Origin: Styela clava
Lineage: Eukaryota
Assembly: GCF_964204865.1 (NCBI RefSeq)
Contig: NC_135255.1
Location: 21,824,001-21,888,000, forward strand
Reading direction: 5' to 3'
Length of the DNA: 64,000 nt
Shown here: positions 17,642-64,000 of the stretch, in pieces
Numbering within the stretch: position 1 is the first letter of the stretch
How the letters are laid out: every line of letters starts with the position of its first letter
The notes under the pieces: model-generated
Told to the model about the DNA's origin: nothing
What the model saw: only the letters and a program-made list of their open reading frames with translations
Databases searched by the model: none
Position numbers and translations under genes: made by a program

Positions 17642-20600
17642 TTATCTGAACCTCCATGTTTGTTAGTCTTATGAGGAATTTCATCATTCCATATTATCTC
17701 TCCTATGTTGCTTCCATTTGTCCGAATCTCAAAGAGTAATCTTTCATTGAATGCTTTTTGGAGCAAGTCATTAAGGTAGGGGTGAGGCAAATATTCAATT
17801 AATTCCTTGGCCTCATATGAAACACCCTGCAAAATTAAACATAATAAATCATTCAACTTTCATCTTTGATACTTTGTTAAAACTGGTATAAACACCAGGT
17901 CATATGTTAAGCTTTAAACTAAAATCTCTGCAACTCAAGATTGTTTGGAATAAAATTGATGATTCCTTAGAAGCAGACAGTTGCAAAAGCATTAGTTGGT
18001 AATTTTGACGGGGGGATGTTTTCAAATAGCAAGTACTAATATATAAGGCAATACTTTAATTGAACAATCGGAATCTTTCTCTCTTAACATTGGATATCAA
18101 AACATTTGATTTCTGGTGAGGAGGAGGGCACACGTTTGAACAGAACAGCATCAGTGGCTCCTCATGCAGAGTTGTCTTTAAATAATATTCATTAAAAGGG
18201 AGTTTTAAATCTTTTAAAAAAGAAATCAACTATAATATAGCTATGATTAGGAGCAGAGTTAAAATATGATGAAACTAACGTTTTACTGATACACAAAAAA
18301 TCTACTGATATGTAAGAGGTTATTATGAAAGGACCAACATATTTTCAGGCACTGCATGCTTGCCAATTTATTTACATTGTTGGTGAGGTCGTGGATCTGG
18401 GATTTGAGGATTAATATGGAGAGAAGTAGCTAAACTATGTTGGCATTACAGGTTAAAAATCTTGGATTCAAGCACATTACTCAGTGCATAATGAAACAGG
18501 TAGGAGTATTTGATAAATTAGGTAGGCAATGCAACCAGACAGATTTCAGTACTACAATAAATAGTAGTGCCTTGCGTATCAGTGGCTGCTCATACATTTG
18601 GAATAAAAGACATGACAAAAGTTTCATAGAAAAGAATTTCATATTAAAAAGTTGACATTTTAGGCATTTGGTATCTTATAGTCGGACGAAATATCAGACC
18701 TAAGATAAATTATTCTTTGCACCAATTATTGCCAAAATTGAATAAACACTATTCCTGAAATAACATTCTCTGATATGGAATTGGGACATGTTCAACAGGA
18801 GTCTGAGAAAATCACAGTACAATTACATATGTGAAAATTTAATTCAGTAATGCAGAATAACTGATATAAACACAGCTTGGATTGATTTTTGCAATTTGCA
18901 ATGTCAGATTTTAAAGAAAGTCATACAATTTTCTTAGGGTGTAATGGAATTCAATTAATATTTAACCACTATTAATCAAATTTGTATTTAGAAGTTTTAA
19001 TTCTAAAACGTAAAATCAATATAAATCAACACAAGCAAGAATCTTGGTTCAGGTAAATATATAATTTAATATTCAACCAACTGAATTCATTATATGACTC
19101 ACATTTAGACTTCCAGCAGGGAATGAGTAGGTGATGACAAAAGTGTACAACTCTACACAACCTGGCAGTGATTCACGCAACCTTTCCACTGACATTCTTC
19201 CACCAGGTGGTTGTTGGTTGATGATTCTTAGACCAGATGAGCTAGCTTGACTTGAAGACTGAGATTCTGTAAATTGAAAATTATTTTAGTGAAAGATGAT
19301 CACAAGACATGATTCTGATTACGCTTAGAATAAAACAATAGGGCATTTTGTAATATTATATATATAAGCCCTTATGAAATCTTATAAGCCCCCACGACAG
19401 TGCTAGGCTCAAATCGTGTAATATATTTTTACCAATGCTTTTGCATATGAGTAATATTGAATATTTTATAAGAATCTACAATTATCTGTAAGTAACGACA
19501 TTGCCTGCCCAATCTGTTACACCCTGGGTGAGGTGTGGGATTTGAACCAGGGAGGCGTAATCTGCAATGGCAACGGCTAAGCCCAATGCTTCAACCACTG
19601 TGTCATCACCAACTGGATATTGGTTCATTTGGTTTTAACCTCGTTACTTTTAAAACAGGAATGAATGAAGTTGAGGTGACCTATTTTCCTAATTATGCTA
19701 AATATTATATCAGTGTTTATATTTTCTATGGATTAAAAATTATCACAATATTGTTCAGAATTATGTAAAACAATGAGCTAGACATGAACAATCCATAGTG
19801 AAATCAGACTCAGTGCTTACTTCAGTAATCTCAGTTATGAAACACAAATGCAGATTGTACCTGGAGTGTCCGTCCTGTTTCCACCCACTGCTCCCATCTG
19901 TGGTTCCTCGACATTCCTTGAGCTGTGAATACTCAATGCAGTGTTGCCCGGGGAAGTTACTGAATTTGCTCTAATACTTGTAGATGTTGGTTGCTGGACT
20001 GACTGATTAGAAGATTCTGAACTCTTTCTTGCCAGAGATAATATTTCATCAAAAAGTTTATCGTAGCATTTACGAGAGTCATTGACTAGAGTTTCCGAGC
20101 GGATGGTTTCTTCTAGAAATTTTAAGGGAAATTTTTTCAGGTCAAGAAGGCTGAACAGTTCATGAAAATTCTTTTTCCTTTTTTGAAGATCATGCTTTAT
20201 CCATCTAAGAGCTCCATGCCATTTAACAGTCTCAGAAGAATATTTTGTGTTTGGGGATTTGTAAATCCTTATGATGTCATCCTTGCTGATATCACAGAAC
20301 TCTTTTTTCTCAATGATTTGTTCGAAATTTGCTTCCAGGAATCGATTCATCACATTTGTCACAGTATTTGGGTTGGTAACTTGACGAGTTTCAGCCAGAT
20401 TCTTCAGGATGAAGCAGTTGTCAATCTCAAGATTTGTCTCAAGATTCTTGACATCAGAGAATAATGCAGTGATGACTGAATTCTTTGCAATGTCATTACT
20501 TTTCACCAGTGGTTCTTCCAACACAGTCTGCAGAAGAAATTTGAAAGGATAAGTCTGGATATTGATGACTGTTACAAGGTCGGCAAAACATCTGCATCTT

Positions 20601-21220
20601 TCTGCATCTTCATCTTTTGCTCTTGCCCATGTTATCATAGCTTGCCATGATGTTTGATAACTCACATTTGAAACTTTTATGTAACGCAGGAGATCTGGCT
20701 TAATAATGAACGGGAACATCTCAGAGGAAATTACTGATTTGAAATTAGTGATCAGCACCTGTTCTGCTTGTTCTTTTATATCAAGGCGATCGTACGCTTG
20801 AGCCAAATTGATGACAGAAAGACAATTGGTCTGAGAGAGATTGGTTTTCAAGTAATGAAAGCAAAAGTTTGTCAAGCCAACCATTTGTAACAGGTTGGAT
20901 GCTTGCAGGATTTGTTGAACATATTCCATTTTCAAATTTCCTACTCCTTTATACATGAATTCTATACATTGGGAAATCCCATTCTGATCGACATCCTTCA
21001 TATCGATAAAACCATCACGAGATTCTTTCATTTTGCTTGAAAACATCGCTTTAAAGTATCCTGACGACGCTGCCAAGACACAGCGATGAGCACGGAACGA
21101 TTTATCACCAACTTTGACATCAAAATTGCAGAGAATGTTTTGTTCTCTCAAGCTATCGAGTGATGTCATAAGCAAACCAGCTTGGGTTGAATTTGTTTTT
21201 TTAATGTAATTTTTATTCAT
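17642..21220 (-). CDS. BTB-BACK-BACK-Deltex C-terminal (DTC) protein, paralog 1, 3'-partial (exons 21220-19861, 19266-19103, 17826-17642; last exon expected left of the window, beyond the pogo array)
   Basis: BTB motif FRAHRCVLAASSGYFKAMF followed by two BACK-like repeats. GT-AG sites keep frame (phases 1, 0, 2) into QQPPGGRM...SLPG...VITYSFPAG and EYLP...LLQKAFNERLLF...IIWNDEIPHKTNKHGG, which match the Deltex C-terminal domain. Confidence 0.8.
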
Positions 21221-21956
21221 GATCAGTCAGCTCAACCTTACTCAGATCAGTAATTAAGTATAACAATTCTAACGCCTGCATAAAAATAATACCATTTTGT
21301 TAATCTCTGTGGTTCATCTTCCAAGCCAAAACAACAGTTTTTTTTTAACATAATAGATGAATTTGCTCTCGTCAACATATACTTTAGAAGTGCAGGTCTG
21401 AATGCAGGTCATAGTATAAGATAATGATGGATTGTAATAGTCTTCCCATGTTATATTATGTACCATAAAAAGTAGAAATAGTCACTACCTCAGAGACTAA
21501 TAAACAATACAATTATCTGATAATTGCGACTGGAAAAAATGGAATGGCATTTCTTCAAAATCTTTACAGCTTTATAGCTAGAAAACACAGATATATTTTG
21601 CAATAAGTAAGGATTCGTATAAACTACTTTATCTTAAAAACGGAATGATGTATTTCACCGAGAAAAAGTTTTTTTTATCTGTGCTAATAGTAAGTTTATT
21701 GGATATCAACAAAATTTGGCCCTACTATTATTTGTCACATTATAATTATAAGTTTATTTCGTCTCCATAATCTGATAATCAGCATAACAGGCAATAAAAT
21801 GATTGACAAACTGAAAATAAAAAAACTGATTATAAAAACAGGACTCAAATCTGATACTACTGTACTATAAATAGATACGGAAACTAGACTACAGTTCATC
21901 TCTTACAGTCTTATCACTGGTACCTATCACAGTCCTGCAGTCTGACAGTGATACAG

Positions 21957-23838: not shown

Positions 23839-23970
23839 AGTCTATTTGTGATATTCCCAAATGAAAATGGCACACTCTCAGAAAAATTAAAGAGTTGATT
23901 CAAATTAAAATTCACAAGCGTATAATGAAAAATTCAACAACTAAATATAACTAAATCTAATGGCTGTTAG

Positions 23971-24304: not shown

Positions 24305-24432
24305 GCGAAGCGAATCGCCGCGGAGATCCAAGAAGCAATAATAAGGCTATGCCGAAAGCACGATATTCGCTCCGACAAAAATGTTGAAGGCCACTGATAT
24401 AGATCAACAGAGATTGAGTGCACACTCTAGCA

Positions 24433-30798: not shown

Positions 30799-33700
30799 TT
30801 AGTATTCAATTCCTGCTGCATTTAATTTTGCTATCAATGCATCACAAAGTTTACGCTCATGGTCATCATCAGGATATCCATTGCTGAAAAATATTAGATT
30901 GCATGAGAGATAATGGTAGTTGCATATGAGTCTGATTTCAATTAACTGTAAAAAATAAGATGTTCAATAAAAGAACACTGAAAATAACAAATATATTTGA
31001 CTGCTTAGGACTAACAAATGCTTAACTTAACGATGCCTGTGTGAGTGAGATTTGAATGTAAGGAATGTAAAATATATATTCATGATGCACGATGGCATAA
31101 TGGTTGAAGCGGTAAACTTAATTGGGTTGGCATCGCAAACCGCACATCTTTGGTTCAAATCCAGTGGGTATCACCCTACCCAAAATATTGAGTAGGCAAT
31201 GCCGAACCAAAATAGAAACTAGTTCTGCCAAATATGATTAGCTCTTTAAATATTGCTACATATCAGTGGAAGCTTAAACAACTTATCCAAAATATGTGGA
31301 TAAGCGCCGTATGATATAAAAACTCAAAGATCTTGTTTATAGAAGAATTTTAGGAATAAGCAGTGTAAGTGTAACTATAATTTATATGTTGGAAGCCCAA
31401 TGAAACATTGACAACAGAGAAGCAGAAAATTTAGTCGTTACTGGAATACGGATCAAATAGATACAAAGTTGGGCAACCATAATTCCAATGACAGATGTGA
31501 CAACAGAGAAACCTAGTAAACAACAGCTGGTCGTTGAACCTGGTTACAGTCGCGTTGCAGACAATTCAAGCCTGAATACCATAATGGTTGATTCTGATTG
31601 TCACTAAGAAATTACCCTCAGTCACATACACCCTAACATTTTGCAACAGCATGACAAATCATGGTCAATATTTATCAGGAGTAGAAAGAACGCTTCCTGG
31701 CCATCCCTCGTCAATCAACTGAAATTCGATAGATGTGATGGTTTCTTATAAATAGCCTTGTTCAAAGTGAAAGGTGTATAATGGATGTATATTAACAAAT
31801 TTAAATGTTGCTTGAAATTAAGAGAGGAAGGTTGAGAACGTTGTACTTGATTGTATCTAGGACGAGGCATTATATCTGTGGTTGAGTGGTTACAAATGTC
31901 ACAAGCTGGATGGATGGTTATGGGATCAAAACTGCGACCCGAAGATGCCTTTCTTTGATTTATAAATAAGAGTTTGCAAAATAGTGTTTAATACAAAAAA
32001 TGACTTTTTATGTGCAAGTTCATTTTTCTAACTTTGCATGGAAGGTCAGTTTGGAAAATAAATATTGATTTGGTTTAATTTAAGGTACTCCCGTAGTATG
32101 TGAACCAAGATGGCGGACATCGGAACACAGTATATGTATCAGGTTGAGGTTGGGCCATACTTTCAGGTACAAATACTACAGGAGTCACTTGGCTGGTCCC
32201 CGAACTCGTAATCAAACTAAAACAAGAAAAATTGGAATAAAACTATGGCCTAACCTTAACCTGGTACACATACTATGTTCGGGTGTCCGCCATCTTGTTG
32301 CACATATTACAGAGCAGCGCCCATTTTTATTTTTGCAATTCACATTTTAAATCTCGAATTTTGTTGGAACTAAATTTTTAATACATCTGTACTTGATATT
32401 ACTTAGTTGAGGCCCCAGTCAATCCTTATAACAATTGTGCATATTTTAAAATATTTAATCAGAAAACTTACTTATCTGGACCTCCACGTTTGTTAGTCTT
32501 ATGAGGAATTTCATCATTCCATATTATCTCTCCTCTGCTGCTTCCAATTATCTGAATCTTGAAGAGCAATCCTGCATTGAATGCTTTCTGAAGCAAGCTT
32601 GTTGTGGAATCGTACAAGTGAGGCACATATTCAGTGAATTCCTTTGCCTCATATGAAACACCCTGCAAACATAAACGCAATAAGTTATTTAACTTCTCTG
32701 ATAATTTATTAAAACTGATATAACCCAGGTGCTCCAGAAGTATGCGCACCAAGATGTCACACAACCTGAATCCTAACCGATACACACATACTATGTTCAG
32801 GTTGTGCGCCATCTTGAAGGTCCAAAAGCCTTAAACTAAAATTTCTGCAACTCAGAATCGATTCCCCAGAAGCAGTTGCAAAAGCATTTTTTTGGTGATT
32901 TTAGTTGGGATGTTTTCAAATACTCGCTCTGAACAAGGCACAAAACAAGCAGGCACTGATACGTTAATTGAACGATTGGAATCTTTTTCACTAAACATTG
33001 ACTATCAAAACATTTGATTTCTAGGTCAGGAGGAGGGAACACATTTGAACCAAAGATGTTTTACATGTGCAAACAAGTAAAATATCCTCAGGAAACATAT
33101 GATCAGTGGCACCTTGTTCAGAGTTGCCTTCACATAACATTAAAATTTTTTTTAATTTTTCAAAAAAGAAATGAAACATAATATATCTATGATTGGAAGC
33201 AGAGTTAGAATATGATGACACTAACATTTTACTGATACACAAAAAATCCACTGATATGTAAGAGGTTATATATAAAAAAAACAAAGGACCAACATTTTTC
33301 CAAGCAGAGCTTTGCTTGCCAATTTATACACATCGTTGGTGAGATCGTGATCTGGGATTTGAAGATTAATGTGAAGAGAAGTAGCCAAACTACGATGGCA
33401 GCACAGGTTAAAAATAGTATATAATGAAATAGGTAAGAGTGTATGATAAATTAGGTGACAATGCAACCAGACAGATTTCAGTACTACAATAAATAGTAGT
33501 GCCTTGCGTATCAGTGGCTGCTCATACATAGCCTTGTTTGGAACAAAAGACATGACAAACGTTTCATAGAAAAAATTCATATGGTAAGTTTGTCATTATA
33601 GGCGTTTGGAATCTTATAGTCGGACAAAACTATCAGACTTAAGATAGATTATGATGATTATTGCCAAAATGAAATACCTAATTTACTATTTCATATAAAT

Positions 33701-36700
33701 TCTTAAATAATATTTTTTTCCAATATTAAATATATTTTAAATTGGGCCATGTCCAACAAGAGTCTGTGAAAACCACTGTACAATTACATATGTGGAAATT
33801 TAATTCAGTAATGCAGAATAACTGATATAAACACAGCTTGGATTGATTTTTGCAATTTGCAATGTGAGATTTTAAAGAAAGTCATACGATTTTCTTCAAT
33901 AACCAAATGCTTTAAAAGACAAATTTTGAAATGAAAACCTCAAATCGAGAATTTGCTCTATGTAATATAAATAATTGTGAATATATTCATTTATTTTGGA
34001 CATCAGCACTGGTAGAGGTAAATTCTGCAAGGGGTCATTAATAAACCAACATAAAAAAATGCTTTCTGGAAACATCGGAAAAATTTCTGGAACATCTGAG
34101 CACTGAGGTGTTATGATGGCCTTGTGGTTATAGCATTGGACTTAGCTATGTTGGATGATAAATTGAAGATCTCAAGTTCAAATTCCATGCCCAATGCCTT
34201 ATCCAGGATGTAATAACTTGAGTAGGCAATTCCAAAACAAAAAAATTACATTCCATCCAAAAATAATAGCTTATTATGCAATAGCCCTGTTTGAAGTGAA
34301 CAATGTAATAAAAAAAAGTGTAATTAGAATTCAGTTGCTATTTGGGGGCAGAAAAATTGTATTTGGAAGATTTAATGTTAAACATAGAATCAATGTAAAT
34401 TATTACAACAAGAATCAAATTTAATACTCAGCCAACTGAATTCATTGCATGACTCACATTCAGACTTCCAGCAGGGAATGTGTAGGTGATTACACGAGTG
34501 CCGCCTGATCCATATCCTGGCAGTGATTCAAGCCACTCTACCACTGAAAATCTTCCATCAGGTGGTTGTTGGTTGATTAGACCAGATGAAGTAGCTTGAC
34601 TTGAAGACTGAGATTCTGTAAATTGAAAATTATTTTAGTGAAAGATGATCACAAGACATGATTCTGATTGTGCTTAGAATGAAATGATAGGGCATTTTGT
34701 AATATTATGTATATAAGCCCTCATGAAATCTTATAAGCCCCCACTGCAGTGCTAGGCTTAAATCGTGTATTATATTTTTACTAATGCTTTTGCATATGAG
34801 TAATATTGAATATTTTGTCAGAATCTACTATTATCTGTAAGTAACGACATTGCCTACCCAATCTGTTACACCCTGGGTGAGGTGTGGGATTTGAACCAGG
34901 GAGGTGTAATCTGAAATGGCAACGGCTAAGCCCAATGCTTCAACCACTGCGTCATCACCAACTGGATATTGGTTCGTTTGATTTTAATCTCGTTACTTTC
35001 AAATCATAAGTACCAGAAACTCGAGTGGAGTTGAGGTGACCAATATTCTAATTATATTAAATATCAAACCAGTATTTATATTGTCTATGGATTAACATTA
35101 ATTTCAATTAGCCTACATATATTCTGAATTAGAATAAATTCTAAAAAAATTAATAAGAATGACATATTTTATTTTTTTGAGTTGTCATGAAAATAACATT
35201 TTATTCAAAAACACCAATTTAATATAGCAGAACTTCCTAAATATCTCTTCATTGAAGCGTTTTTGTGGGAGAAGTGGAGTCGGAGTACTTGTATAAAATA
35301 TCATATTATAAAGAAGATTTTTGCCATTAATGCAAAAGCTTTATCTCCCATGTCTGACCACATAACTTATAAGTTATAATTTTAGCAAATATTGCTATGT
35401 AATGAAAAATTGGGTTATAAAATTACTCGCACACAGCTATTTGATTAAGTTTATACTCGCATGCAAATTATTTGTCAACTTTATCATTTTTCCATTCAAA
35501 AACGGAAAAATGGCGATTTCGTAGTCTGCAGCTTTTTACAAAAAAGAGATTCAGTAGTGAACACTGCTCATCAGAATAATGTCATACTAACTGAAGTATG
35601 CCTATGGGACCATGTCGAGCCATGAATATAACATTTGTGCTTCTGTAAATAATTGAAGTCATGTCTTTTGAAGGCCCCTGAACATTTGCAAGATTTTGGA
35701 ATTAAGGCTTGACAATTTTTTGAAGTACAAGATTGAAATTTGGAATTGGGTGCCATTCCCCTTATCTAGAAAGGTCCTTCATGTATACAACAACGTTCGT
35801 ACCAGTAGAATTGTAAAAGTTTTATTTTTTTAATGACATCAGCGTGAAACCATTATATTAATCCTACAGTATATCTTACAGCCTTGTTATGCACAGGTGA
35901 AAGATCCATGACTGGTAATGCTGCTAAAAATTTGCCAAAAACACCATTCAAATCTTAAGGTCATGCAGACTTGCAAATTTTGATATTTGTATGATTTCCT
36001 CGATAATAACAAATGACAACAGCGAGAAACTAGTTTTATGTTTGTTCAAGTTTTAGGAGCTACTTGTTTATAGCCTTGTACAAAAGTAGGAGACGAGATA
36101 TATTGTACAAGAAACCCAACCTGTAGTTTTAGATCTTGCTCCTGATGATGAATTCCCCTGCTTATGCTGATGCTTCGGTCTTGCAGAACGTGAAGTTGCA
36201 GGCTGCTCATCCAGGCTTCGGCTTTCTAAATGTTTAATAACGTTTAGGCCTCTAATATATAGGAATTTTTTTTTATCCAAGAAACAAAAAATTGTATAGT
36301 TAAACTGAAGGAGCCTAAAATTATGACTACCGGTAATTATATTAATTTTACAGGTCTCCAATTCATAATTTGAATACTGCTTGAAATGCTGTGGACATAA
36401 AATTTATATTCATAGAGGCAAAAAAAATGACAACAGTCACTTATAATCATGATGAATGCCAAATCGGTATCAATTTTGAAGAGGGAAGACTGAAATATTA
36501 CATGATATTCACCGTTTTGTTAATAGTGTTTGCACATTCGGTGTTATAATAGTACATGTATATGTTTAAAATTGCAAACTGTGCGTGACACTTTGGGGAT
36601 CGAACAAATGAAGGAAACATGATAATTTATGCATAGTGAAAAGATCAGAGAGATTTGGAATATACAATAACAGGAATAGATTAAAAATAATTTGGAACCG

Positions 36701-39700
36701 CACTGGCCTAAGCCTATAACCAGTTCGGCCTATATCAGGTAAGACAAGTATTACATAATTATTATTTATTTTATTCATTTGGGCAAAATTTAAAAAAATA
36801 TTATATTTTTGTGTCATCAAATTTTTCATAACCTTATATTTTTACACCATTCGAAGCAGAACATTAAATAAATTTTGGCAAATTGAGGAGAACTGGATGA
36901 GATTTTCTGATGTGCGATAAATATCCAACATAAATTTTCATTTCCTCGATTAGACATTATCATGAGTAGGTGACTTTCGGCAATACAAAAATAATGGAGC
37001 TTTCCCAGCACAAATTGCCTTAAAAGACTAACTTCTGAAAATTTATTTATTTTTGTTCTTTGAGTCTAATTTAGAAGTACATTGTTTAAGAGTATTTGGT
37101 ACAAATTCACGTTATGGCATTAATATTTCCTAACTCTGTTCGATTTCTGCACCTCCTTCGATACTGATGCCAACAGCTTGACTTCCTGAAAATATAAAAC
37201 AATACGATTAGTCAAGAAACATTGGGCTAACAAAAGCATCACGTATGTAGTTATCCAAAATCTTTATAATCTTGAAATACTAAGGATGACTATTATAGAA
37301 GAATTCAATATCATATATTGGTAGAAATAATTTGATAGGACTGACGATTGTGTATGCAACAAACCCTGGCTGTTGTCTATCTGTTTTCAATTGTCAGACA
37401 GGTTAAATTAGACAGCAGATGACTATTATGTAATGACAAGGATTGAATTAAGAAATTTCGTCACAGAAACATCTCCCATGGGATGTGAACCCACATAAAG
37501 TGAGGAAACAATTGTTCAATTAAATATGGATCAAATATTCTCACCTTCAGTATTTCTGGCATTATTTGCATCAGAAGCTCTGGAAACGGTGCCAGCTCCA
37601 ACCATAAAATCTAGGAAAAAATTAAGTCATATTCATTGTTTGCTAGTAAAAGTGGATAATGTAAGTGGCCCTACTGTACATTGTTAAGAGAATGGCCCAA
37701 TATGAATCTAACGGAAGAAAAGCAAAAACTTGAATATCACAAACCCCGTTTTTATTTGTATATTAAAATTTTAGCCTGAGAATAGTCAATTGAACTCTTT
37801 ACTTTTTCTTATTTATATATTGCAATTATATACAAAATAAACATATATTTTAGCAATACCTCCATGAATTTGAACGATATTTTTGAAGACAGGAGTTCGA
37901 TTGGGAGAGTCGTCATAGTTGTGTTCTGAAGATTTTTTTTCTGAATTTAAATAAAAATATAAAATCAGTCAACAACTGTACGTGTGATAAAATAAGTTTA
38001 TTGCACAACTGCAGACATGATATAGATACAAATATGACCCTATGCTACAGTCTGTTACAGTAAAACAGTACCACCGTGTTTGCAACTTCGTATAATATTG
38101 AGATCGCTTATGCTTAAGGGGAACAATTTTTATTATTGCACACAAAAAAACAAATCTATCGAAATGAATAAAAATAAACCTTCTAACGAAAAATAATTCT
38201 TCAACAGCTGAAAATTTCCAAGCTATGGGTAGTAGTAGAGAAAAGTTATTTTTCATGCGGTAGGAACAACAAGAAAAATAATAACATGATGATCTATAAC
38301 AACAACATAATAACAAAACGATCTAAAGGACCACTTTGTGCCCAAAGATTAGTAATTGAAACACACAAATAATTTTTTTGACTCGTATGAAACTGTCAAC
38401 ACCTGTTAGGATTTCTCAAATCTTGGGATTCAAATTTCTAAGAACATCTTTTTGTATCGTACAAATGGTTATTTTGTTGTGGTCATGTAAAGTCTGACTG
38501 ATTATTAACGACATCCCCGGATTCCCACCACTTGATAATATGCAATATCATAACTCAATAATAAACTATTCACAAACCTTGATAACGAGCTCTTTTGAGG
38601 TGTCGTACATCTCCCACAGAATAAACAAATTTGAGGCTATCAGAACCTGGATTTTCAGGATCTAATAGAAATGAAAAAGCTTTGTATAGCTCCCTTTCAT
38701 AAAACTCCATTGTGACTTTTAATATAGTTTTTTCCGCACTTTCGAATTTATACTTTTCGGGTTCCTTACTCTCTAAATTAACAGGGAGTACGTCTCCAGG
38801 GTTAACTGTAAGTTTTGTAGATGGAGGATGAATGATTTTATAGCCAGTTTTAATCCATTCGCTTTTTAGCTTTTCTGCAAGTTTATCACTAGAAACAAAA
38901 TGAACGGATACAAAACTACCCAAATGATCCTTGCACAGAAAATATAAAAGGTCAAATTTTACAAGTTCCAGATCTTTAGAATTTAGTGCAGGAATCTTTT
39001 CACAGAAACTGTCAGCGGTGAAGGAAACAAAGCCAGAATCAGTCAAAGACACCTCATCACAATACTGCCATTGTCCCCTCTTTTGCCTTTTATAAATGTA
39101 AAGTTGCACTGGTCTTTTGCATTTTTTAGATATACTACACCAAATTGGCATTTTAAAAACCACAGGAAATTTGAATTTTAAACCTCCAGGCGCACAATGT
39201 AGGGGGAGTGAGACAGGTATTAAACCAGAAGGCAAAGTAAGATTGTCAATGTCATCTGACACATAAAATTTTGTTCTAATTGGAATATCAACAGCATTTT
39301 GGGGGAAAATGACTTCATAGGAAAACAGCTTGATTGTGCCTCCACCAGGTCCAACAGTGTAACCTGAAAGTAAAACAGTTCATTTAACCGAGTTTATGAA
39401 TCTGCAGAATGATACTTTAGTTTCAATATATTGTGCGAGGAATTACACTAAGAACTGCACTGCATATGCTAGTTAAATACATGAATTAGCCTTCATACAA
39501 AAATCTAATTGAAGTACCCATAAATTGGTTGGTGTTTCATTATAAATAAATCACCACATAACTACTAACAGCGCTTGACCGTGGAGTAGATGCACAATTG
39601 TAAGAAAAAAAACTTTTACTCTGGTAGACAAATATGAAAGCTCAGTTGGTTATTCCCTTCTGCTCAAAGTTAGTTCAAGCTTGGGATTTTTCTAATCAAA

Positions 39701-41437
39701 CTATAAAACGAGAATATCGGTCAGAGACCGAAGACTTATCGATCGAAAGTTAGGGGATCCCCCAAAACAGCGCTCTTGACACCTTGTGTCCCACCACTAA
39801 TTAATTGATAACTCGTTGATTATGGGACATAATTCGCCCAAAATCAATAGACTTCTGGTCCGAGATAAGATGAACGCACATGCAAAATGGAGCAGATTCA
39901 ATCTCGCTTTTGTGAGATATCGCGTGCATCTAACAGATATACAGACAGACAGACAAATACCTATCAACATACTTACCGATTACAATCGATAAGTAATGAC
40001 AAGTTGACATGAACAAAAACTGGTCAGACTCGATGCTCACTTTATCAATCTCAGTTAAGAAACACAAATGCAAGAGATTGTACCTGAAGTGTCACTCCTG
40101 TATCCACCCACTGCTCCCATCTGTGGTTCTTGGACATTTTTAGAGCTTTGGCTACTTGATGCAGTGTTGTCCAGGGAAGTTTCTGTATCTGCTCTAGTAC
40201 TTGTAGATGTTGGTTGCTGGACTGACTGATTAGAAGATTCTGAACCCTTTCTTGCTCGAGATAATATTTCATCAAAAAGTCTATCGTAGCATTTACGAGA
40301 GTCATTGACTAGAGTTTCCGAGCTGATGGTTTCTTCCAGAAATTTTGAGGGAAATTTTTTCAGGTCAAGAAGGCTGAACAGTTCATGAAAAATATTTTTC
40401 CTTTTTTGAATATCATGCTTTATCCATCTAAGAGCTCCATGCCATTTAACAGTCTCGGAAGAATATTTTGTGTTTGGGGATTTGTAAATCTCTATGATGT
40501 CATCCTTGCTGATATCACAAAACTCTTTTTTCTCAATGATTTGTTCGAAATTTGATTCCAGGAATTGATTCATCACATTTTTCACAGCATTTGGGTTGGT
40601 AACTTGATGAGTTTCAGCCATATTCTTCAGAATGAAGCAGTTGTCAATCTCAAGATTTGTCTCAAGATTCTTGACATCAGAGAATAATGCAGTGATGACT
40701 GAATTCTTTGCAATGTCATTACTTTTCACCAGTGGTTCTTCCAAGACAGTCTCCAGAAGAAATTTGAAAGGATAAGTCTGGATATTGATGACTGTAACAA
40801 GGTCGGCAAAACATCTCTCTGCATCTTCATCTTTTGCTCTTGCCCATGTTTTCATAGCTTGCCATGATGTTTGATAACTCGCATTTGAAACTTTTATGTA
40901 ACGCAGGAGATCTGGCTTAATAATGAACGGGAACATCTCAGAGGAAATTACTGATTTGAAATTAGTGATCAGCACCTGTTCTGCTTGTTCTTTTATATCA
41001 TGACGATCGTACGCTTGAGCCAAGTTGATGACAGAAAGACAATTGGTTTGAGAGAGATTGGTTTTCAAGTAATGGAAGCAAAAGTTTGTCAAGCCAACCA
41101 TTTGTAACAGGTTGGATGCTTGCAGGATTTGTTGAACGTACTCCATTTTCAAATTTCCTACTCCTTTATACATGAATTCTATACATTGGGAAATCCCATT
41201 CTGATCGACATCCTTCATATCAATAAACCCATCACGAGATTCCTTCATTATGCTCGTAAACATCGCTTTAAAGTATCCTGATGAGGCTGCCAAGACACAG
41301 CGATGAACACGGAAGGATTTGTCACCGACTTTGACATCGAAATCGCAGAGAATGTTTTGTTCTCTCAAGCTATCGAGTGATGTCATAAGCAAACCGGCTT
41401 GGGTTGAATTTGTTTGTTTAATGTAATCTTCATTCAT
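30799..41437 (-). CDS. BTB-BACK-BACK-ZU5/UPA-like-DTC protein, paralog 2, about 950 aa (exons 41437-40084, 39363-38578, 37940-37860, 37610-37545, 37185-37153 or -37135, 36225-36121, 34615-34458, 32662-32472, 30883-30799)
   Basis: All exons are bounded by AG/GT and stay in frame. ZU5 motifs: VGPGGGTI, VIFPQNAV, VSLPLHCAPGGLKFKFPV. DTC ends IIWNDEIPHKTNKRGGPD-NNGYPDDDHERKLCDALIAKLNAAGIEY*. The small internal exons are less certain. Confidence 0.75.
32088..32320. mobile_element. MITE with inverted ends (…CAAGATGGCGGAC…/…GTCCGCCATCTTG…); orthologous copy at ~60128-60360, relatives at ~28586-28670 and ~32726-32815
   Basis: Inverted terminal sequence; present in the introns of paralogs 2 and 3, absent from paralog 1. 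Confidence 0.65.
39708..39996. mobile_element. Helentron/DINE-1-like non-autonomous element; copies at 51967-52252 and partial at ~30087-30246
   Basis: Subterminal inverted repeat ACTTATCGAT/ATCGATAAGT, internal (CAGA)n and a 3' hairpin. The 51967 copy interrupts sequence that is contiguous at ~28270. Confidence 0.6.
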
Positions 41438-56923: not shown

Positions 56924-59900
56924 TTATTTAATTCCTGCTTCCTTTAATTTCGCCTCCAATGCTGCACGAAGTTTACGCGTATGGTCATCATCAGGATATC
57001 CATTGCTGAAAAAGATTAGATTGCATGAGAGATAATGGCAGTTGCATATGAGTCTGATTTCAATTAACTGTGAAAAAATAAGATGTTCGATAAAAGAACA
57101 CTGAAAGTTACAAATATTTGACTCCATAGTACTAAGAAACGCTTAACTTAGCGATGCCTGTGTGAGTGAGATTCGAATGTAAGGTTTAGATGTGTAAAAA
57201 GGATGTCAAGTCAACTTTACTCTTAGGTAGAACTTCAAAACCCAGTAAGTCTGATTGGACAGAGCACTGATCGATGCGAAAGTGTAAAACCACCAAATAG
57301 AAAATAAATTGATTTGAGGGCAATGGCCTAGTGCAGCGGTTCCCAAAAGGTGAGTCGCGTGTTTTCAGGTGTGCCACGAAAATTATTAGAATAACTAATA
57401 TAAAATATGATTTGATATTTTACAATTTACATATTGTCTTTATTATAAAAGTTTTATTGTTTCCTATTTAAATGCTGTGTATATGGATCAATAAATTCCA
57501 TTTAGCTTGCTATGTCGTTATGTAACAATAGATATAAACACCACTGCAATTTCGTGAGATGCAATTTATTTATCTGCTGAACTGAGTTAAGCGAACATGC
57601 AGAGATGAAGAAGAAAAGCTGGCCTTTTACCTCCATTCCTTAGGCCTACGAGTTTACTAGCGTTAGAGGACATAAAGTACACCCTAACGATCACAATATT
57701 TACCATACTGTTCCGTGCAAGAGCGTCGCGAGCATTTTCCCTTGATAATTTGGCGCCGTACGAACAAAAGGTTTGGAAACCGCTGGCCTAGTGGTTAAGT
57801 GTTAGACTTGACTAATGACTTGGCTGGCATCGCAATTCGCACATATCAAGTTCAAATCCCATAACCACCAAACCCAAGGTGTAAAAAATGAGTAGGCAAT
57901 GCTGAACTGAAAAGATTCTATTTCTTCCATATAATAGTAGCCCTTTACATATTGCTAGATATCAGTGGAAGTTTGAACAGGGCCTTGTTTACAGCAAAAT
58001 GTGTGAATGAGCATCTCATATATGAAAACCTTAAACATCTCATTTATAATAGAATTTTAAGAATAAGCAGTGTAAGTGTAACTATAATTTATATGTTGGA
58101 TGCCCCATGAAACTTTGACAACAGAGAAGCAGAAGTTTAGTCGTTACTGGAATACGGATCAAATAGTTACAAAATTGGGCAACCATAATTCCAATGACAG
58201 ATGTGACAACAGAGAAACCTAGTAAACAACAGCTGGTCGTTGAACCTGGTTACAGTCACGTTGCAGACAATTCAAGCCTGAATATCATAATGGTTGATTC
58301 TGATTGTTACTAAAAAATTACCCTCAGTCACATACACCCTAACATTTTGCAACAGCATGACAAATCATGGTCAATATTTATCAGGAATAAAAAGAATGCT
58401 TCCTGGCCATCCCTCACCCATCAACTGAAATTTGATGGATGCGATGGTTTCTTATATATAGCCTTGTTCAAAGTCAAAGGTGTACAATGGATGGGTATTA
58501 ATAACAAATTTAAATGTTGCTTGAAATCAAGAGAGGAAAGTTGAGAACGTTGTACTTGATTTTACCAAGGATGAGATCAGGCGCGCAGCCAGGATTTTCA
58601 AAAGGGGGGGGTTCATAATCATAAATTCCCATTGCGGTCTGTAACAATCTTCGCATTACGCGCTCGTTAAAGGGTCGTCTTTTCAGCGAATAATGATTAT
58701 TCTTGTTGCGTGAAATATTCAATTCCTGACAACTACAAAATTCTAAAATGTCTTTATATATTTATTTAATTGTGTCCAATGTAACTCGCGGTTTCTTCTT
58801 CATACGTCAAAATTAAAACATTAGTTCTCTGAAATGCCACGGCGATCGGTGGACATAAAAATATGAGATAAACGGTGTATTTAATTTGAATACGTATTTT
58901 TGGAATCTTGCCAACTCGTTATCGCTGTTAGAAAAATCTCAATAACTGATATAAAATCCCGAAAAGTACAATTTTATTTCGTACAATGAAAATGCCTATG
59001 AAGTATATCGTTAAATTAAAAATACATATTCATCGCCGCGATTAGGCCACTTGTTAAAAGAGCCGACGTTTACAACGAAAAATGATTTTCCTGTTGTGCA
59101 AAGTAATCAATTCGTGACCGATAAGGGCATATTTAAAATGTCTTGCTTTATTAATTTAATTGTCTTCAATTTAACCAGCGTTTCGTCGACAAAACAAAAC
59201 AATTTTTTACAATTCACAATTTTAAAATACCTCGGCCAATTGCCGACATAAAAATTTGTGGTAACTGCCCGTCGCCTATTATATATTGTTTTGATCCGCA
59301 TTTTTTCTATTTTGCAAATTCGACAAATTTGAGATGTGCTTGTAACATTGACATATAAATTACGGTTTTATTTTCAGTATTTTATAATGCAGCTTTTCAA
59401 TCAAATTTAGATCGCGGTTTTACTCCTTTTGTCTTTAGAACCTCGCCACCGATGAACGTATATTACAAACTCATGAATTCACAATTCCGTGCAAAGTACA
59501 AAAATAAAATAATTATCATGTTTATCGTGGCACAAATTTATGACTTAGAAAGAATAAAAACCGACATAAGGGCGTTTACGGCCTAAATAACACGCTGATG
59601 AAAACATGGGCGATTTTAGCAGAAGGCAATTGTACGCTTTTTCATTTTTCACATTTACGTGCGGGTACAAAAATAAAATAATTATCATTGTTCCCGCGGT
59701 ACAAATTTGTGATTTAAAGAGAATAAACACCAATGTGAAGGGCGTTCACGGCATAAATAAGACGCCGCGTTGATGAAAACGAACAGCGATTTTAGCAGAA
59801 GGCAATTGCACGTGTTATCGGCAACTTTTTCACTTTTCAGAAAATTTCAAAAGGGGGGGAGGGGGGTTCGACCCCGAAAACCCCACTTGGCTGCGCCACT

Positions 59901-62900
59901 GGATGAGATATCTGTGGTTGAGTGGTTACAAATGTCACAAGCTGGATGGATGGTACTGGGATCAAAAGTGCAACCCAAACATGCCTTTCTTTGATTTATA
60001 AATAAGAGTTTGCAAAATAGTGTTTAATTTTAATACAAAACATGACTTATTATGTGCAAGTTCATTTTTCTAACTTTGCATGGAAGGTCAGATTGGAAAA
60101 TAAATATTGATTTGGTTCATTTTAAGGTGCTCCCGTAGTATGTGAACCAAGATGGCGGACATCGGAACACAGTATGTGTATCAGGTTTGGGTTGGGCCAT
60201 AATTTCAGGTACAAATACTACAGGAGTCACTTGGCTGGTTCCCGAACTCGTAATCGAACTAAAACAAGGAAAATTGGAATAAAATTATGGCCTAACCCTA
60301 ACCTGGTACACATACTATGTTCAGGTGTTCGCCATCTTGTTGCACATTTTATGGAGCAGCGCCGATTTAAATTTTTGCGATTCACATTTTAAATCTCAAG
60401 TTTTGTTGGAACTAAATTTTTAGTACATCTGTAGTACTTGATATAACTTAGTTGAGGTCCCAGTCAATCCTTATAACAATTGAGCATATTTTAGAATATT
60501 TAATCAGAAAACTTACTTATCTGGACCTCCAAGTTTGTTAGTCTTATGAGGAATTTCATCATTCCATATTATCTCTCCTCGGCTGCTTCCAATTATCTGA
60601 ATCTTGAAGAGCAATCCTGCAATGAATGCTTTCTGGAGCATGTCATTAAGGTATCCAGGCAAATATTCAGTGAATTCCTTTGCCTCATATGAAACACCCT
60701 GCAAAATAAACATAATAAGTTATTCAACTTCCAACTCTGATAATTTATTAAAACTGATATAAATAAACACAGGTGCTCCAGAAGTATGCGCACCAAAATG
60801 TCGCACAACCTGAATCCTAACCGATACACACATACTGTGTTCAGGTTGACTATCAAAACATTTGATTTCTAGGTCAGGAGGAGGGCACACATTTGAACCA
60901 AAGATGTTTTACATGTGCAAACAAGTAAAATATCCTCAGGAAACATATAATCAGTGGCACCTTGTTCAGAGTTGCCTTCACATAACATTATTTAAAAAAA
61001 AGTTTTAATTTTTCAAAAAAGAAATCAAACATAATATATCTATGATTGGGAGCAGAGTTAGAATATGATGACACTAACATTTTACTGATACACAAAAAAT
61101 CCACTGATATGTAAGAGGTTATTTAGGAAACAACAAAAGGACCAACATTTTTTCAGGCAGAGCATTGCTTGCCAATTTAAATACATCGTTGGTGAGATCG
61201 TCGATTTGGGATTTGAAGATTAATGTGAAGAGAAGTAGCCAAACTACGTTTGCATCACAGGGTAAAAATCCTGGATTCAAGCACATTACTCAGTGCATAA
61301 TGAAATAGGTAGGAGTGTAAGATAAATTAGGTAGGCAATGCAACCAGAATGATTTCAGTACTACAATAAATAGTAGTGCCTTGTGTATCAGTGGCTGCTC
61401 ATACATAGCCTCTTTTGGAACAAAAGACATGACAAACGTATCATAGAAAATATTCATATAGTAAGTTTGTCATTTTAGGCGCTTGGAATCTTATAGCCGG
61501 ACAAAACTATCAGACTTAAGATAAATTATGAAGAATATTGCCAAAATGAAATACCTATATTACTATTTCATATAAATTCTCAGAATAATTTTTTTTTCTC
61601 AATATTAAATATATTTTAAATTGGGCCATGCCCAACAAGAGTCTGTGAAAATCACTGTACAATTACATATGTAGAAATTTAATTCAGTAATGCAGAATAA
61701 TTGATATAAACACAGCTTGGATTGATTTTTGCAATTTGCAATATCAGATTTTGGAGAAAGTCATACGATTTTCTTCAATAATCAAATGCTTTGAAGGACA
61801 AATTCTGAAATGAAAACCTCAAATCAAGAATTTGCTCTATGTAATATAAACAATTGTGACTATATTCATTTATTTTGGACATCAGCTGGACTGGTAGAGG
61901 AAAATTCTGCAAGGGGCCATTAGACCAACATAAAAAACTGCTTTCTGGAAACATCGGAAAAAATTTCTAGAACATCTAAGCACTAAGGTGTTGTGATGGT
62001 CTTGTGGTTATATCATTGGACTTAGCTATGTTGAATCATAATTTAAAGGTCTCAAGTTCAAGTCACATGCCCACTGCCTTATCCAGGATGTAATAACTTG
62101 AGTAGGCAATGCTGAAACGAAAAATTCACTTCCAAAAATAGCAGCTTCTTATGCATTAGTGGTTACTTATGCAGGGCCCTGTTTAAAGTGAACAATGTAA
62201 TAACAAAGGTGTAATTAAAATTCAATTGCTATTTGGGGGCAGAAAAATTGTATTTGGAAGATTTAATGTTAAACATAGAATCAATGTAAAATATTACAAC
62301 AAGAATCTTGGTTCCAGTAAATTCGTAATTTAATATTAAACCAACGGAATTCATTACTTGACTCACATTCAGACTTCCAGCAGGGAATGAGTAGGTGATG
62401 ACATAAGTGCTGAACCCTTCATACCCTGGCAATGATTCACGCAACCCTTTCTTTGACATGCTTCCACCTGGTGGTTGTTGGTTGATGATTCTTAGACCAG
62501 ATGAAGTAGCTTGACTTGAAGACGGAGATTCTGTAAATTGAAAATTATTTTAGTGAAAGATGAACACAAGATATGATTCTGATTACGCTTAGAATAAAAC
62601 GATAGGGCATTTTGTAATATTATACATATAAGCCCTCATGAAATCTTATAAGCCCCTACGGCAGTGCTGGGCTCAAATCGTGTATTATATTTTTACTAAT
62701 GCATTTGCATATGAGTAATATTGAATGTTTTGTAAGAATTTACTACTATAAATAAGTATGTATTGCCTGCTCAATCTATTTCACCCTGGGTGAGATGTAG
62801 GATTTGAACCAGGGAGGTGTAATCTGAAATGGCAACGGCTAAGCCCAATGCTTCAACCACTGGCAATGCACCAACCTCGTTACTTTTAAATCATTAGTAC

Positions 62901-64000
62901 TAGAAACTCAAGTGGAGTTGAGGTGACCAATATTCTAATTATGTTAAATATCAAACCAGTATTTATATTGTCTATGGATAAACATTAATTTCAATTAGCC
63001 TACATATATTCTGAATTAGAATAAATTCTAAAAAAATTAATAAGAATGACATATTTCATTTTTTTGAGTTGTCTTGAAAATAACATTTTATTCAAAAACA
63101 TCAATTTAATATAGCAGAACTTCCTAAATATGTCTTCATTGAAGCGTTTTTGTGGGAGAAGTGGAATCGGAGTACTTGTATAAAGTATCATAATATAAAC
63201 AAGATTTTCGCCATTAATGCAAAAGCTTTATCTCCCATGTCTGACTACATAACTTATAAGTAATAATTTTAGCAAATATTGCTATGTAATGAAAAATTGG
63301 GTTTTAAAATTACTCGCACACAGCTATTTCATAAGTTTATACTCGCATGCAAATTATTTGTCAACTTTATAATGTTTCCATTCAAAAACGAAAAAATGGC
63401 GATTTCGCAGACTGCAATTTTTACACAAAAAGAGATTCAGTAGTGAACACTGCTCATCAGAATAATGTCATACTAACTGAAGTATGCTTATGGGGCCCTG
63501 TCAAGCCATGAATATAACATTTGAGCTTCTGTATATAATTAAAGTTATGTCTTTTGAAGGCCTGAACATTTGCAAGTTTCGGAATTAAGGCTTGACAATT
63601 TTTTGAAGTACAAGATTGAAATTTGGAATTGGGTGCCATTTCCCTTATCTAGAAAGGTCCTTCATGTATACAACAATGTTCGTACCGGTAGAATTGTATA
63701 AGTTTTATTTTTTTAATGACATCAGCGTGAAACCATTATATTAATCTTACAGTATATCTTACAGCCTTGTTATGCACAGGTGAAAGATCCATGACTGGTG
63801 ATGCTGCTAAAAATTTGCCATGCAGGCCATGCAGGCTTAATTCCTCGATAATAACAAATGACAACAGCGAGAAACTAGTTTTATGTTTGTTCCAGTTTTA
63901 GGAGCTACTTGTTTATAGCCTTGTACAAAAGTAAGAGACGAGATATATTGTACAAGAAACCCAACCTGTAGTCTTAGATCTTGCTCCTGATGATGAATTC
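56924..64000 (-). CDS. Paralog 3 of the BTB/DTC family, 5'-partial (exons >64000-63966, 62530-62367, 60698-60517, 57005-56924)
   Basis: Exons and introns are colinear with paralog 2 (30799-36160); ends NNGYPDDDHTRKLRAALEAKLKEAGIK*. Its BTB and ZU5 exons are outside the window and only inferred. Confidence 0.78.
57334..57785. mobile_element. hAT MITE (452 bp) inserted into the A-box region of a degenerate tRNA-like SINE
   Basis: TSD GCCTAGTG (57326-57333, 57786-57793); TIRs CAGCGGTTCCCAAA / TTTGGAAACCGCTG. Confidence 0.85.
58578..59901. mobile_element. Non-autonomous hAT-like element (1324 bp)
   Basis: TSD GATGAGAT (58570-58577, 59902-59909); TIRs CAGGCGCGCAGCCA / TGGCTGCGCCACTG; absent at the matching site in paralog 2 (~31865). 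Confidence 0.85.

What the first reader, a model, noticed from the sequence alone, without database searches (positions are those of the whole stretch)
17642..64000. Tandem family of BTB-BACK adaptors carrying a RING-less Deltex C-terminal domain in place of Kelch
Seen: three tandem minus-strand genes. In paralogs 1 and 2 a BTB-BACK-BACK exon splices in frame to three DTC-like exons (QPPxGxM...SLPGY...ITYxFPAG / EYLP...LLQKAF...LLF...IWNDEIPHKT...GG / GYPD...GI). No RING or Kelch repeat is visible. Known: BTB-BACK proteins are Cullin-3 substrate adaptors; in Deltex E3s (DTX1-4, DTX3L) the DTC follows a RING and binds ADP-ribose/NAD+ and nucleic acids. Inference: the DTC has been moved into the substrate-receptor slot of a CRL3 adaptor, with the RING supplied in trans by CUL3-RBX1. 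I do not recognise this architecture from any described protein. An ORF-based annotation would call these 'kelch-like' and miss the fusion.
Basis: partly seen in the sequence, partly recalled or inferred. Interest (0 to 1): 0.88.

Follow-up and report, generated by a model that had tools for sequence, protein, structure and literature searches.

The report
RING-less Deltex domain on Cullin-3 adaptors
A sea squirt (Styela clava) carries about 80 copies of a Deltex C-terminal domain that has lost its RING partner and its catalytic residues, and most copies are spliced onto Cullin-3-adaptor heads (others onto kinase or ZU5-UPA heads), which looks like a fast-evolving, lineage-specific signalling family that no paper I could find describes.

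Summary
The window is Styela clava, G000:C6:21.824-21.888 Mb. It carries three minus-strand three-exon DTC cassettes. Two of them follow a single-exon BTB-BACK-BACK head.

All junctions are canonical GT-AG in matching phase.

- For it: the BTB keeps the CUL3-contact phi-x-E motif. Sister genes in the same genome are BTB-BACK-BACK-Kelch.
- Against it: the Deltex residues that bind ADP-ribose and catalyse (DTX2 R535, H582, H594, E608) are F, P, N and A family-wide. Only W578 is kept.
- Against it: the same cassette (about 84 copies; clusters on C5 and C6) also sits behind Ser/Thr-kinase and ZU5-UPA heads. On a tree the DTCs group by chromosomal cluster, not by head.

Selection differs by part: heads give dN/dS about 0.3, the DTC about 1, with about 1.5 at its recurrently variable sites.

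Best reading: CUL3 adaptors whose repurposed, catalytically dead DTC is the fast-evolving targeting module.

RefSeq already models these genes, but I found no paper describing them. First readers of this scan flagged the same architecture on other pieces of this genome. RNA reads could not be obtained.

The parts
19861..21220 (-). P1 exon A: BTB (aa 21-127), BACK x2, Ser/Thr-rich linker. The donor is in phase 1.
   Evidence: Pfam. 100% identical to P0001 aa 1-453. GT donor after 19861.
19103..19266 (-). P1 exon B: linker end plus DTC profile positions 4-42 (QQPPGG...SLPG...ITYSFPAG).
   Evidence: Pfam DTC 19.4 bits. AG/GT boundaries.
17642..17826 (-). P1 exon C: DTC profile positions 46-113 (EYLP...LLQKAF...IWNDEIPHKT...GG). 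Exon D lies outside the window at L003:8593-8510 (C6:21822510-21822593).
   Evidence: Pfam DTC 27.8 bits. Boundaries. Exon D.
1..17293 (.). Six tandem copies, 100% identical, of a 2937-bp pogo-like transposon (HTH_psq + DDE_1). They fill the last intron of P1. The array starts at L003:9672.
40084..41437 (-). P2 exon A: BTB-BACK-BACK head, 91% aa identity to P1. The donor is in phase 1.
36121..39363 (-). Four intact exons of a ZU5-UPA head inside P2 intron 1: 39363-38579, ~37962-37855, ~37611-37543, ~36235-36121. They are part of a 5-kb segment (35001-39996) that is 95% identical to the segment upstream of P3's cassette. Both ends are phase-1 compatible.
   Evidence: tblastn to RefSeq ZU5-type proteins. 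Phases and duplication. ZU5: Pfam 17.4 bits, sub-threshold; ESM Atlas 0.96; Foldseek to ankyrin and UNC5b ZU5-UPA.
34458..34615 (-). P2 exon B (DTC part 1).
32472..32662 (-). P2 exon C (DTC part 2).
30799..30883 (-). P2 exon D (DTC C-terminal helix, NGYPD...AGIEY, stop).
62367..62530 (-). P3 exon B. The head of this gene is ZU5-UPA type and lies right of the window (L002:7193-1406).
60517..60698 (-). P3 exon C.
56924..57005 (-). P3 exon D.

Best explanation
These are intact, spliced genes of a Styela-lineage family. A three-exon, RING-less Deltex C-terminal (DTC) cassette is joined through phase-1 introns to interchangeable heads. In this window the heads are single-exon BTB-BACK-BACK modules (P1, P2) and a ZU5-UPA module (P3, with a second copy inside P2's intron). 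Elsewhere in the clusters the heads are Ser/Thr kinases.

The BTB-BACK-BACK-DTC proteins most likely dimerise and dock on CUL3-RBX1 like KLHL proteins. [quoted passage not shown] They would use the DTC, which sits where Kelch sits in their sister genes, as the targeting module.

The DTC keeps the Deltex fold and a strongly conserved pocket motif, but that motif is remodelled (IIWNDE[IF]PHKTN...NNGYPD). It has lost the Arg, His, His/Tyr and Glu residues that bind and activate ADP-ribose in Deltex E3s. It is therefore a non-catalytic binding domain whose ligand is probably no longer canonical ADP-ribose.

Peripheral loops evolve fast. Cassettes are homogenised or exchanged within each chromosomal cluster, so CUL3 adaptors, kinases and ZU5-UPA scaffolds of one cluster carry near-identical DTCs and would be aimed at the same target or complex.

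Shown here: the architecture, the residue changes, the selection pattern and the head swapping. Inferred: CUL3 binding, the targeting role and the nature of the ligand.
For: Gene structure and RefSeq identity.

Domains: Pfam BTB, BACK x2 and DTC (56 bits) in P0001. Foldseek of the model's DTC against DTX3L 3PG6 gives TM 0.74, rmsd 2.5 A. BTB-BACK matches KLHL11, KLHL3 and KBTBD2 CUL3 complexes.

CUL3 contacts: phi-x-E and the A77/M78 equivalents are conserved.

Origin: sister genes are BTB-BACK-BACK-Kelch. Intron positions in the DTC (profile positions ~40-46 and ~112) are the same as in canonical Styela DTX genes.

Family size and integrity: 84 exon-C copies without a single internal stop and about 50 BTB-BACK-BACK heads.

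Selection: dN/dS is 0.28-0.34 for the head and 0.78-1.23 for the DTC. Columns that are variable in the independent C5 cluster give omega 1.52 in the C6 copies; conserved columns give 0.49.

Lost Deltex residues. Canonical Styela DTX loci keep them, as do 97-99 of 136 DTCs matched in the 143 newly returned proteins of the HMMER search.

Head swapping: heads are scattered over the DTC tree, which splits by cluster (C6 99/95, C5 99/93). Fifteen label changes are needed, against 16.6 for shuffled labels.

Other species: a 546-aa BTB-BACK-DTC protein sits on a 2175-nt Logan contig of another species, in one continuous ORF, with the same P/D/A substitutions.
Against: No RNA reads could be laid on the locus, so splicing rests on conserved splice sites, RefSeq models and one intronless contig from another species.

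CUL3 binding is untested. Cullin genes exist at five or more loci, but CUL3 orthology was not resolved.

The BTB part of the model has low pLDDT.

A mean omega near 1 in the DTC could partly reflect relaxed constraint. The partition test uses non-independent pairs and carries no significance test.

Whether P2 skips or includes the ZU5-UPA exons is unknown.

The pocket motif is conserved, so some nucleotide-like ligand, even ADP-ribose in a new pose, cannot be excluded.
Confidence: 0.55

Rival explanations
1. The DTC still binds ADP-ribose, NAD+ or nucleic-acid 3' ends. The protein is a CRL3 receptor for ADP-ribosylated substrates, with RBX1 standing in for the lost Deltex RING.
For: The DTC fold and the adenine-stacking Trp (W578 equivalent) are kept, and the pocket motif is the most conserved part of the domain. 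DTC alone pulls down PAR in human Deltex proteins (PMC7442474). The BTB CUL3 motif is kept.
Against: The equivalents of R535, H582 and H594 are F, P/L and N. The S567/S568 loop is shortened by 2 residues and the HPNPG segment is absent. The S568A/H582A/H594A triple mutant of DTX2 abolishes ADPr binding. E608 is Ala here, so hydroxyl activation is lost.
Confidence: 0.18
2. The DTC acts as a protein-protein assembly module, like a death-fold domain. It would bring BTB-type, kinase-type and ZU5-UPA-type family members (and perhaps a membrane receptor with a DTC tail) of one cluster into a common signalling complex. The BTB members would then ubiquitinate components of that complex.
For: The same cassette sits on CUL3 adaptors, kinases and ZU5-UPA heads, and on a single-pass membrane protein in another Logan contig (P0108). 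In known proteins ZU5-UPA is followed by a death domain or CARD (top fold hits 4D8O, 3G5B, 7CRW). DTCs are homogenised within each cluster irrespective of head.
Against: DTC-DTC binding has no precedent that I know of. No positive evidence was obtained here. The conserved pocket motif fits a small ligand at least as well.
Confidence: 0.17
3. These are decaying duplicates or annotation chimeras. The DTC exons are relics with relaxed constraint and the BTB-BACK exon is the only functional product, ending at the read-through stop.
For: The DTC has a mean dN/dS near 1. At least one RefSeq isoform joins exons of different paralogs: P0071 uses P3 exons B and C with P2's exon D. Transposons fill the introns.
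Against: 84 of 84 exon-C copies have open frames. Splice sites and phases are conserved in all copies examined. Core columns give omega 0.49 and motifs are invariant across clusters. The architecture is kept in another species as a single ORF.
Confidence: 0.07

Closest known systems
Deltex E3 ligases (DTX1-4, DTX3L): RING-DTC
   Same: Homologous DTC domain (Pfam PF18102 at 56-64 bits; fold match to 3PG6). Same intron positions as the canonical Styela DTX genes. The Trp of the adenine pocket and the HKT/GYPD motifs are kept.
   Different: No RING anywhere in the gene. The catalytic His-Glu pair and the ADPr-binding Arg and His/Tyr are replaced (P/L, A, F, N). The phosphate loop is shorter. The domain is fused to BTB-BACK-BACK, kinase or ZU5-UPA heads. 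About 80 copies exist, against 3-4 canonical genes.
BTB-BACK-Kelch CUL3 adaptors (KLHL/KBTBD; KLHL3 4HXI, KLHL11 4AP2)
   Same: [quoted passage not shown] The nearest relatives in the same genome are BTB-BACK-BACK-Kelch proteins, colinear to about aa 395.
   Different: The Kelch propeller is replaced by a disordered Ser/Thr linker plus the DTC. There is a second BACK repeat. The C-terminal module is encoded by separate exons.
Lineage-specific BTB-MATH (BATH) expansions of nematodes and plants (from my own knowledge: Thomas 2006, Genome Res)
   Same: Large tandem families of CUL3 adaptors with a conserved BTB head and a substrate-binding domain showing elevated dN/dS. These have been proposed to track fast-evolving targets.
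   Different: The recognition domain here is a DTC, not MATH. The recognition cassette is also shared with kinases and ZU5-UPA proteins.
Vertebrate RING-less DTX3L-like proteins (for example si:busm1-163l24.3 of Alosa; frog and blenny relatives)
   Same: DTC with the same P / N / A(I,V) replacements, and no Pfam-detectable RING.
   Different: Their N-terminal part is the NID / PARP14-like RRM type. There is no BTB, kinase or ZU5 head and no large expansion. They are also uncharacterised.
ZU5-UPA-death-domain and FIIND-CARD proteins (ankyrin, UNC5, PIDD1, NLRP1, CARD8)
   Same: The neighbouring head type (P3, and inside P2's intron) is ZU5-UPA-like, with a C-terminal effector or adaptor domain after it.
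   Different: A DTC stands where the death-fold domain would be. The HF-S/C self-cleavage tripeptide reads HFV (by eye), so autoproteolysis is doubtful.

Membership tests
DTC domain (Pfam PF18102) | Profile match over the gathering score | tested here: met
   P0001 scores 56.4 bits against a cut-off of 25, at profile positions 4-128. Exon C alone scores 27.8 bits.
DTC domain (Pfam PF18102) | DTC fold | tested here: met
   Foldseek of the AF2 model against 3PG6_B: TM 0.74, rmsd 2.5 A, 133 columns, probability 1.00. The DTC part of the model has pLDDT 73-91.
Deltex E3 ligase family | RING domain immediately N-terminal to the DTC | tested here: not met
   No RING family in P0001 or in any of about 90 family proteins. 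No RING pattern in six frames of the window, but that regex also found nothing in three canonical Deltex loci, so it is weak. P1's intron 1 is only 594 nt.
Deltex E3 ligase family | Catalytic His-Glu pair (DTX2 H582/E608 = DTX3L H707/E733) | tested here: not met
   Pro (rarely Leu) and Ala. The motif is WND[EK][IF][PL]HKT in 46 of 46 proteins matched and Ala is present in 44 of 46. HMMER alignment to 3PG6. Residue roles from PMC7615817 and PMC11460948.
Deltex E3 ligase family | ADP-ribose contacts R535, S567/S568 loop, W578, H594 | tested here: not met
   R535 is F in 40 of 42. The loop is 13 residues against 15. H594 is N in 45 of 46. Only W578 is kept (PMC7442474).
CUL3 substrate adaptors of the BTB-BACK type | BTB and BACK domains | tested here: met
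   BTB 87 bits; BACK 73-78 bits in 2 stretches. PDB hits to KLHL3 and KLHL11.
CUL3 substrate adaptors of the BTB-BACK type | phi-x-E motif and 3-box at the CUL3 interface | tested here: met
   M64-K65-E66 aligns with KLHL3 M83-S84-E85, and A58/M59 with A77/M78. The 3-box (KLHL3 150-176) aligns without gaps. These residues are conserved in 33 paralogs.
CUL3 substrate adaptors of the BTB-BACK type | Physical binding to CUL3 and substrate ubiquitination | not testable with these tools
   Cullin genes are present at five or more loci. Neither CUL3 orthology nor binding was tested.
BTB-BACK-Kelch (KLHL) family | C-terminal Kelch propeller | tested here: not met
   No Kelch family in P0001. Sister proteins P0057 and P0058 have Kelch repeats after the same head.

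The most novel reading that the evidence does not exclude
The RING-less DTC has become a new kind of shared signalling module in a stolidobranch ascidian lineage. Its pocket would be remodelled and conserved to sense a new ligand (for example an NAD-derived or nucleotide signal, or a modified protein), or the domain would act as a homotypic adaptor. Through exon-level head swapping it would wire CUL3 adaptors, Ser/Thr kinases, ZU5-UPA scaffolds and perhaps membrane receptors into one rapidly diversifying network. That network would be immune- or allorecognition-like, analogous to death-fold or TIR networks but built on a Deltex domain.
Probability: 0.2. Interest if true: 0.85.

Novelty: new variant of a known kind. 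Interest (0 to 1): 0.6.

Why it matters
All functional work on the DTC treats it as half of a RING-DTC catalytic unit that binds ADP-ribose and activates it for ubiquitin transfer. This family shows the fold surviving on a large scale (about 80 open cassettes) without the RING and without the catalytic or ADPr-binding residues, joined to three unrelated effector heads.

That gives two things. First, it is a natural test of what a DTC can do by itself. Second, it adds a new class of putative CUL3 receptors whose recognition domain is neither Kelch, MATH nor a zinc finger.

The phase-1 'head | DTC cassette' design, with a hybrid locus caught in the window (the BTB exon followed by ZU5-UPA exons and then the DTC), is also a clean example of ongoing exon shuffling in tandem arrays.

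The pattern of a conserved head and a diversifying tail suggests a role in immunity or self/non-self recognition in an invasive tunicate. That link is inference only.

Tried and rejected
- Short DTC proteins that looked like cDNA-derived fragments (P0094-P0119) turned out to be RefSeq models, not transcripts.
- Complex prediction (DTC of P0001 against the DTC of the ZU5-type protein P0077) was busy three times. It then returned 'no answer', score 0.00. This is no evidence either way.
- Exon D alone gave no meaningful PDB hit.
- The RING regular expression found nothing in the window, but it also found nothing in three canonical Deltex loci (L004-L006) scanned alongside it and missed the Pfam-confirmed RING in P0121, so I treat it as weak.
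I replaced it with phmmer using the three head types as queries.
- Literature searches for BTB + Deltex C-terminal, and the S. clava genome and transcription-factor papers, mention nothing on this family.
- The spliced model was never typed or joined for a database search. Searches used exon references and the database protein P0001, which is identical to the model. Exons were concatenated only inside scripts, to count substitutions.
- Rejected idea: that P3 is a third BTB gene. Its head is ZU5-UPA.
- Rejected idea: that 35.1-40.0 kb in P2 is a transposon insertion. It is a 95% copy of a neighbouring gene's head.


Full report
**What the window is.** The 64-kb window is eukaryotic (GC 30-41%, no N). 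It is G000:C6:21824001-21888000 of a 377-Mb assembly. The best protein matches are RefSeq proteins of the ascidian Styela clava.

**Checking the observation.** Two minus-strand ORFs (21220-19835 and 41437-40055) each carry Pfam BTB and two BACK stretches. Downstream I found three sets of short conserved exons. Searched exon by exon, they hit only Pfam DTC. Exon B covers profile positions 4-42. Exon C covers 46-113 and passes the cut-off on its own at 27.8 bits. Exon D (NGYPD...AG[IF]) was found at 30883 and 57005.

Enumerating splice combinations against the database protein P0001 left one canonical GT-AG solution for paralog 1: 21220-19861 | 19266-19103 | 17826-17642 | L003:8593. The homologous sites in paralogs 2 and 3 are conserved, with polypyrimidine tracts and identical phases.

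P0001 (LOC144424265, 597 aa) is 100% identical to exons A and B, and matches exon C except at the split codon. It scores BTB, BACK x2 and DTC (56.4 bits) with no RING and no Kelch. An AlphaFold model built on 33 paralogs has a confident BACK region, a disordered linker (aa 403-466) and a folded DTC. The DTC superposes on the DTX3L DTC (3PG6) with TM 0.74 and rmsd 2.5 A, and the head matches KLHL11, KLHL3 and KBTBD2. I used exon references and P0001.

**Corrections to the anatomy.**
(i) P1's last exon lies 1.4 kb left of the window. The intron before it holds six 100%-identical tandem copies of a 2937-bp pogo-like transposon (HTH_psq + DDE_1), from L003:9672 to window 17293.
(ii) The third cassette (62530-56924) does not belong to a BTB gene. 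Its head exons lie right of the window (L002). They encode a coiled-coil region and a 262-aa exon that is ZU5-UPA-like. The evidence is Pfam ZU5 at 17.4 bits (sub-threshold, and the only family hit for it and for four distant paralogs), ESM Atlas at 0.96, and Foldseek top hits to ankyrin-B ZU5-ZU5-UPA-DD, UNC5b and the NLRP1 FIIND, on a low-confidence model.
(iii) P2's 5.4-kb first intron is not junk. Window 35001-39996 is a 95% copy of the segment upstream of P3's cassette, and it contains four intact ZU5-UPA-head exons.

Three junction types share phase 1: the BTB exon donor, the ZU5 exon acceptor (39363), and the ZU5-head last donor (36121) with the DTC exon B acceptor. P2 could therefore encode BTB-BACK-BACK-DTC or BTB-BACK-BACK-ZU5-UPA-DTC. 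Which one is made is unknown.

**The family.** The exon-C query finds 84 copies in the genome, all with open frames. About 31 lie on C6 (21.71-22.55 Mb) and about 46 on C5 (2.6-5.6 Mb), with a few on C19, C10 and C1. About 50 BTB-BACK-BACK head exons lie in the same clusters.

Searching the DTC part of P0001 against 5.8 billion proteins returned only S. clava proteins. These carry three kinds of head: BTB-BACK-BACK, Ser/Thr kinase plus coiled coil, and the ZU5-type head. Some RefSeq loci show different heads as isoforms of one gene.

On a maximum-likelihood tree of 47 DTCs, the domains split by chromosomal cluster (C6 99/95, C5 99/93), not by head. Head labels need 15 changes, against 16.6 for shuffled labels, and there are well-supported BTB+ZU5 and BTB+kinase sister pairs. 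The cassette is therefore exchanged or homogenised among neighbouring genes.

The DTC intron positions match those of the canonical Styela Deltex genes. This points to an origin from a Deltex gene by exon shuffling.

**Outside Styela.** An exhaustive HMMER search with a family member gave 299 hits. Among the 150 listed, the only non-Styela BTB-BACK-DTC protein is P0100. It is 546 aa on a 2175-nt Logan contig, so it is one continuous ORF. It is only about 41% identical to the best S. clava locus, so it comes from another, unidentified species. It shares the substitutions described below.

Another Logan contig (P0108) encodes what by eye looks like a single-pass membrane protein, with a DTC tail.

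Fish and frog DTX3L-like proteins without a Pfam RING carry the same substitutions. A catalytically 'dead' RING-less DTC is therefore not unique to ascidians. The BTB, kinase and ZU5 fusions are.

**Does it work like Deltex?** In DTX2, ADP-ribose is held by R535, the S567/S568 loop, W578, H582 and H594, and the S568A/H582A/H594A mutant loses binding (PMC7442474). H582 and E608 activate the 3'-hydroxyl (PMC7615817). The DTX3L equivalents are H707, Y719 and E733 (PMC11460948).

HMMER alignments to 3PG6 and family-wide motif counts give these replacements:
- R535 is F (40 of 42).
- The loop is two residues shorter.
- W578 is kept.
- H582 is P (or L).
- H594 is N (45 of 46).
- E608 is A (44 of 46).

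Canonical Styela Deltex loci keep His-His, an aromatic residue and Glu. So do 97-99 of the 136 DTCs matched in the 143 newly returned proteins of the HMMER search.

The remodelled pocket motif is nevertheless the most conserved part of the domain across both clusters. I read this as a pocket that is still used but has different chemistry, not as decay.

**Does it work like a CUL3 adaptor?** KLHL3's CUL3 contacts A77, M78 and the phi-x-E motif M83-S84-E85 (PMC3616122) align with A58, M59 and M64-K65-E66. The 3-box aligns without gaps. These positions are invariant or nearly so in 33 paralogs.

The closest relatives of the head in the same genome are BTB-BACK-BACK-Kelch proteins, colinear to about residue 395. 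The DTC really does occupy the Kelch slot. CUL3 binding itself is inferred, not shown. Cullin genes are present at five or more loci, but orthology was not resolved.

**Selection.** Between the neighbouring copies, the head has dN/dS 0.28-0.34 and the DTC exons 0.78-1.23. I partitioned DTC columns by their variability in the independent C5 cluster. The variable third gives omega 1.52 in the C6 copies and the conserved half gives 0.49. This is suggestive, not a formal test, because the pairs are not independent. The variable patches include the loop right after the EYLP motif, which follows the R535-equivalent position. That this loop lies near the pocket is my inference.

**Verdict.** It overreaches on ADP-ribose reading, and it misses that the DTC is a cassette shared with kinase and ZU5-UPA heads.

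RefSeq already models the genes, as 'uncharacterized', 'kelch-like' or 'DTX3L-like'. I found no description in the literature. Other first-stage notes of this scan flag the same architecture, the swapped heads and the lost catalytic residues on this genome. I tested those points independently here.

Noticed in passing
window 1-17293 (array starts at L003:9672): Six head-to-tail copies of a 2937-bp pogo-like transposon. ORFs carry HTH_psq and DDE_1 and appear split by a frameshift. The copies are 100% identical to each other and sit inside the last intron of P1. This is either a very recent tandem amplification or an assembly artefact.
   Followed up: partly
window 35001-39996: A 5-kb segment, 95% identical to the region upstream of P3's DTC cassette, puts four intact ZU5-UPA-head exons between P2's BTB exon and its DTC exons. 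All are phase-1 compatible. This is a hybrid locus that looks like exon shuffling caught in the act.
   Followed up: yes
window 30802-30882 with 60519-62534 and L002: RefSeq isoform P0071 (LOC144411735 X2) uses P3's exons B and C (98-100% identical) but ends with P2's exon D (100% identical) about 30 kb further on, instead of P3's own intact exon D. This is either read-through splicing across a paralog or a chimeric model.
   Followed up: no
window 46355-46942 (+): ORF with a MULE transposase domain (46 bits), flanked by further ORFs (46078-47501) without a Pfam match.
   Followed up: partly
G000:C6 21787600-22380111 (six places, one at window 38579-39364): The 262-aa ZU5-like exon occurs six times on C6 at 97-100% amino-acid identity. 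This is far more uniform than the DTC cassettes that follow it (about 65-85%). Distant paralogs (22-27%) lie on C8 and C14.
   Followed up: partly
L005 (G000:C1:11086549-11087518; RefSeq LOC120348513, P0121): A 1023-aa RING-containing Deltex-like protein with a PARP14-type RRM and three DTC stretches. Its last DTC already has Pro at the catalytic His position (WNGIPHKT). It is a possible intermediate between canonical Deltex proteins and the RING-less family.
   Followed up: partly
P0108 (Logan contig of 1548 nt, species unknown): By eye from the sequence, a single-pass membrane protein with a signal peptide and an Ig-like ectodomain. Its cytoplasmic tail ends in a DTC of the same Pro-for-His type, which is the only part confirmed by Pfam.
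   Followed up: no
P0162, P0170, P0190, P0229 (fish and frog proteins): Vertebrate DTX3L-like proteins with NID/PARP14-RRM N-termini, no Pfam RING, and the same P/N/A(I) replacements in the DTC. They appear to be an uncharacterised RING-less Deltex branch in vertebrates.
   Followed up: partly
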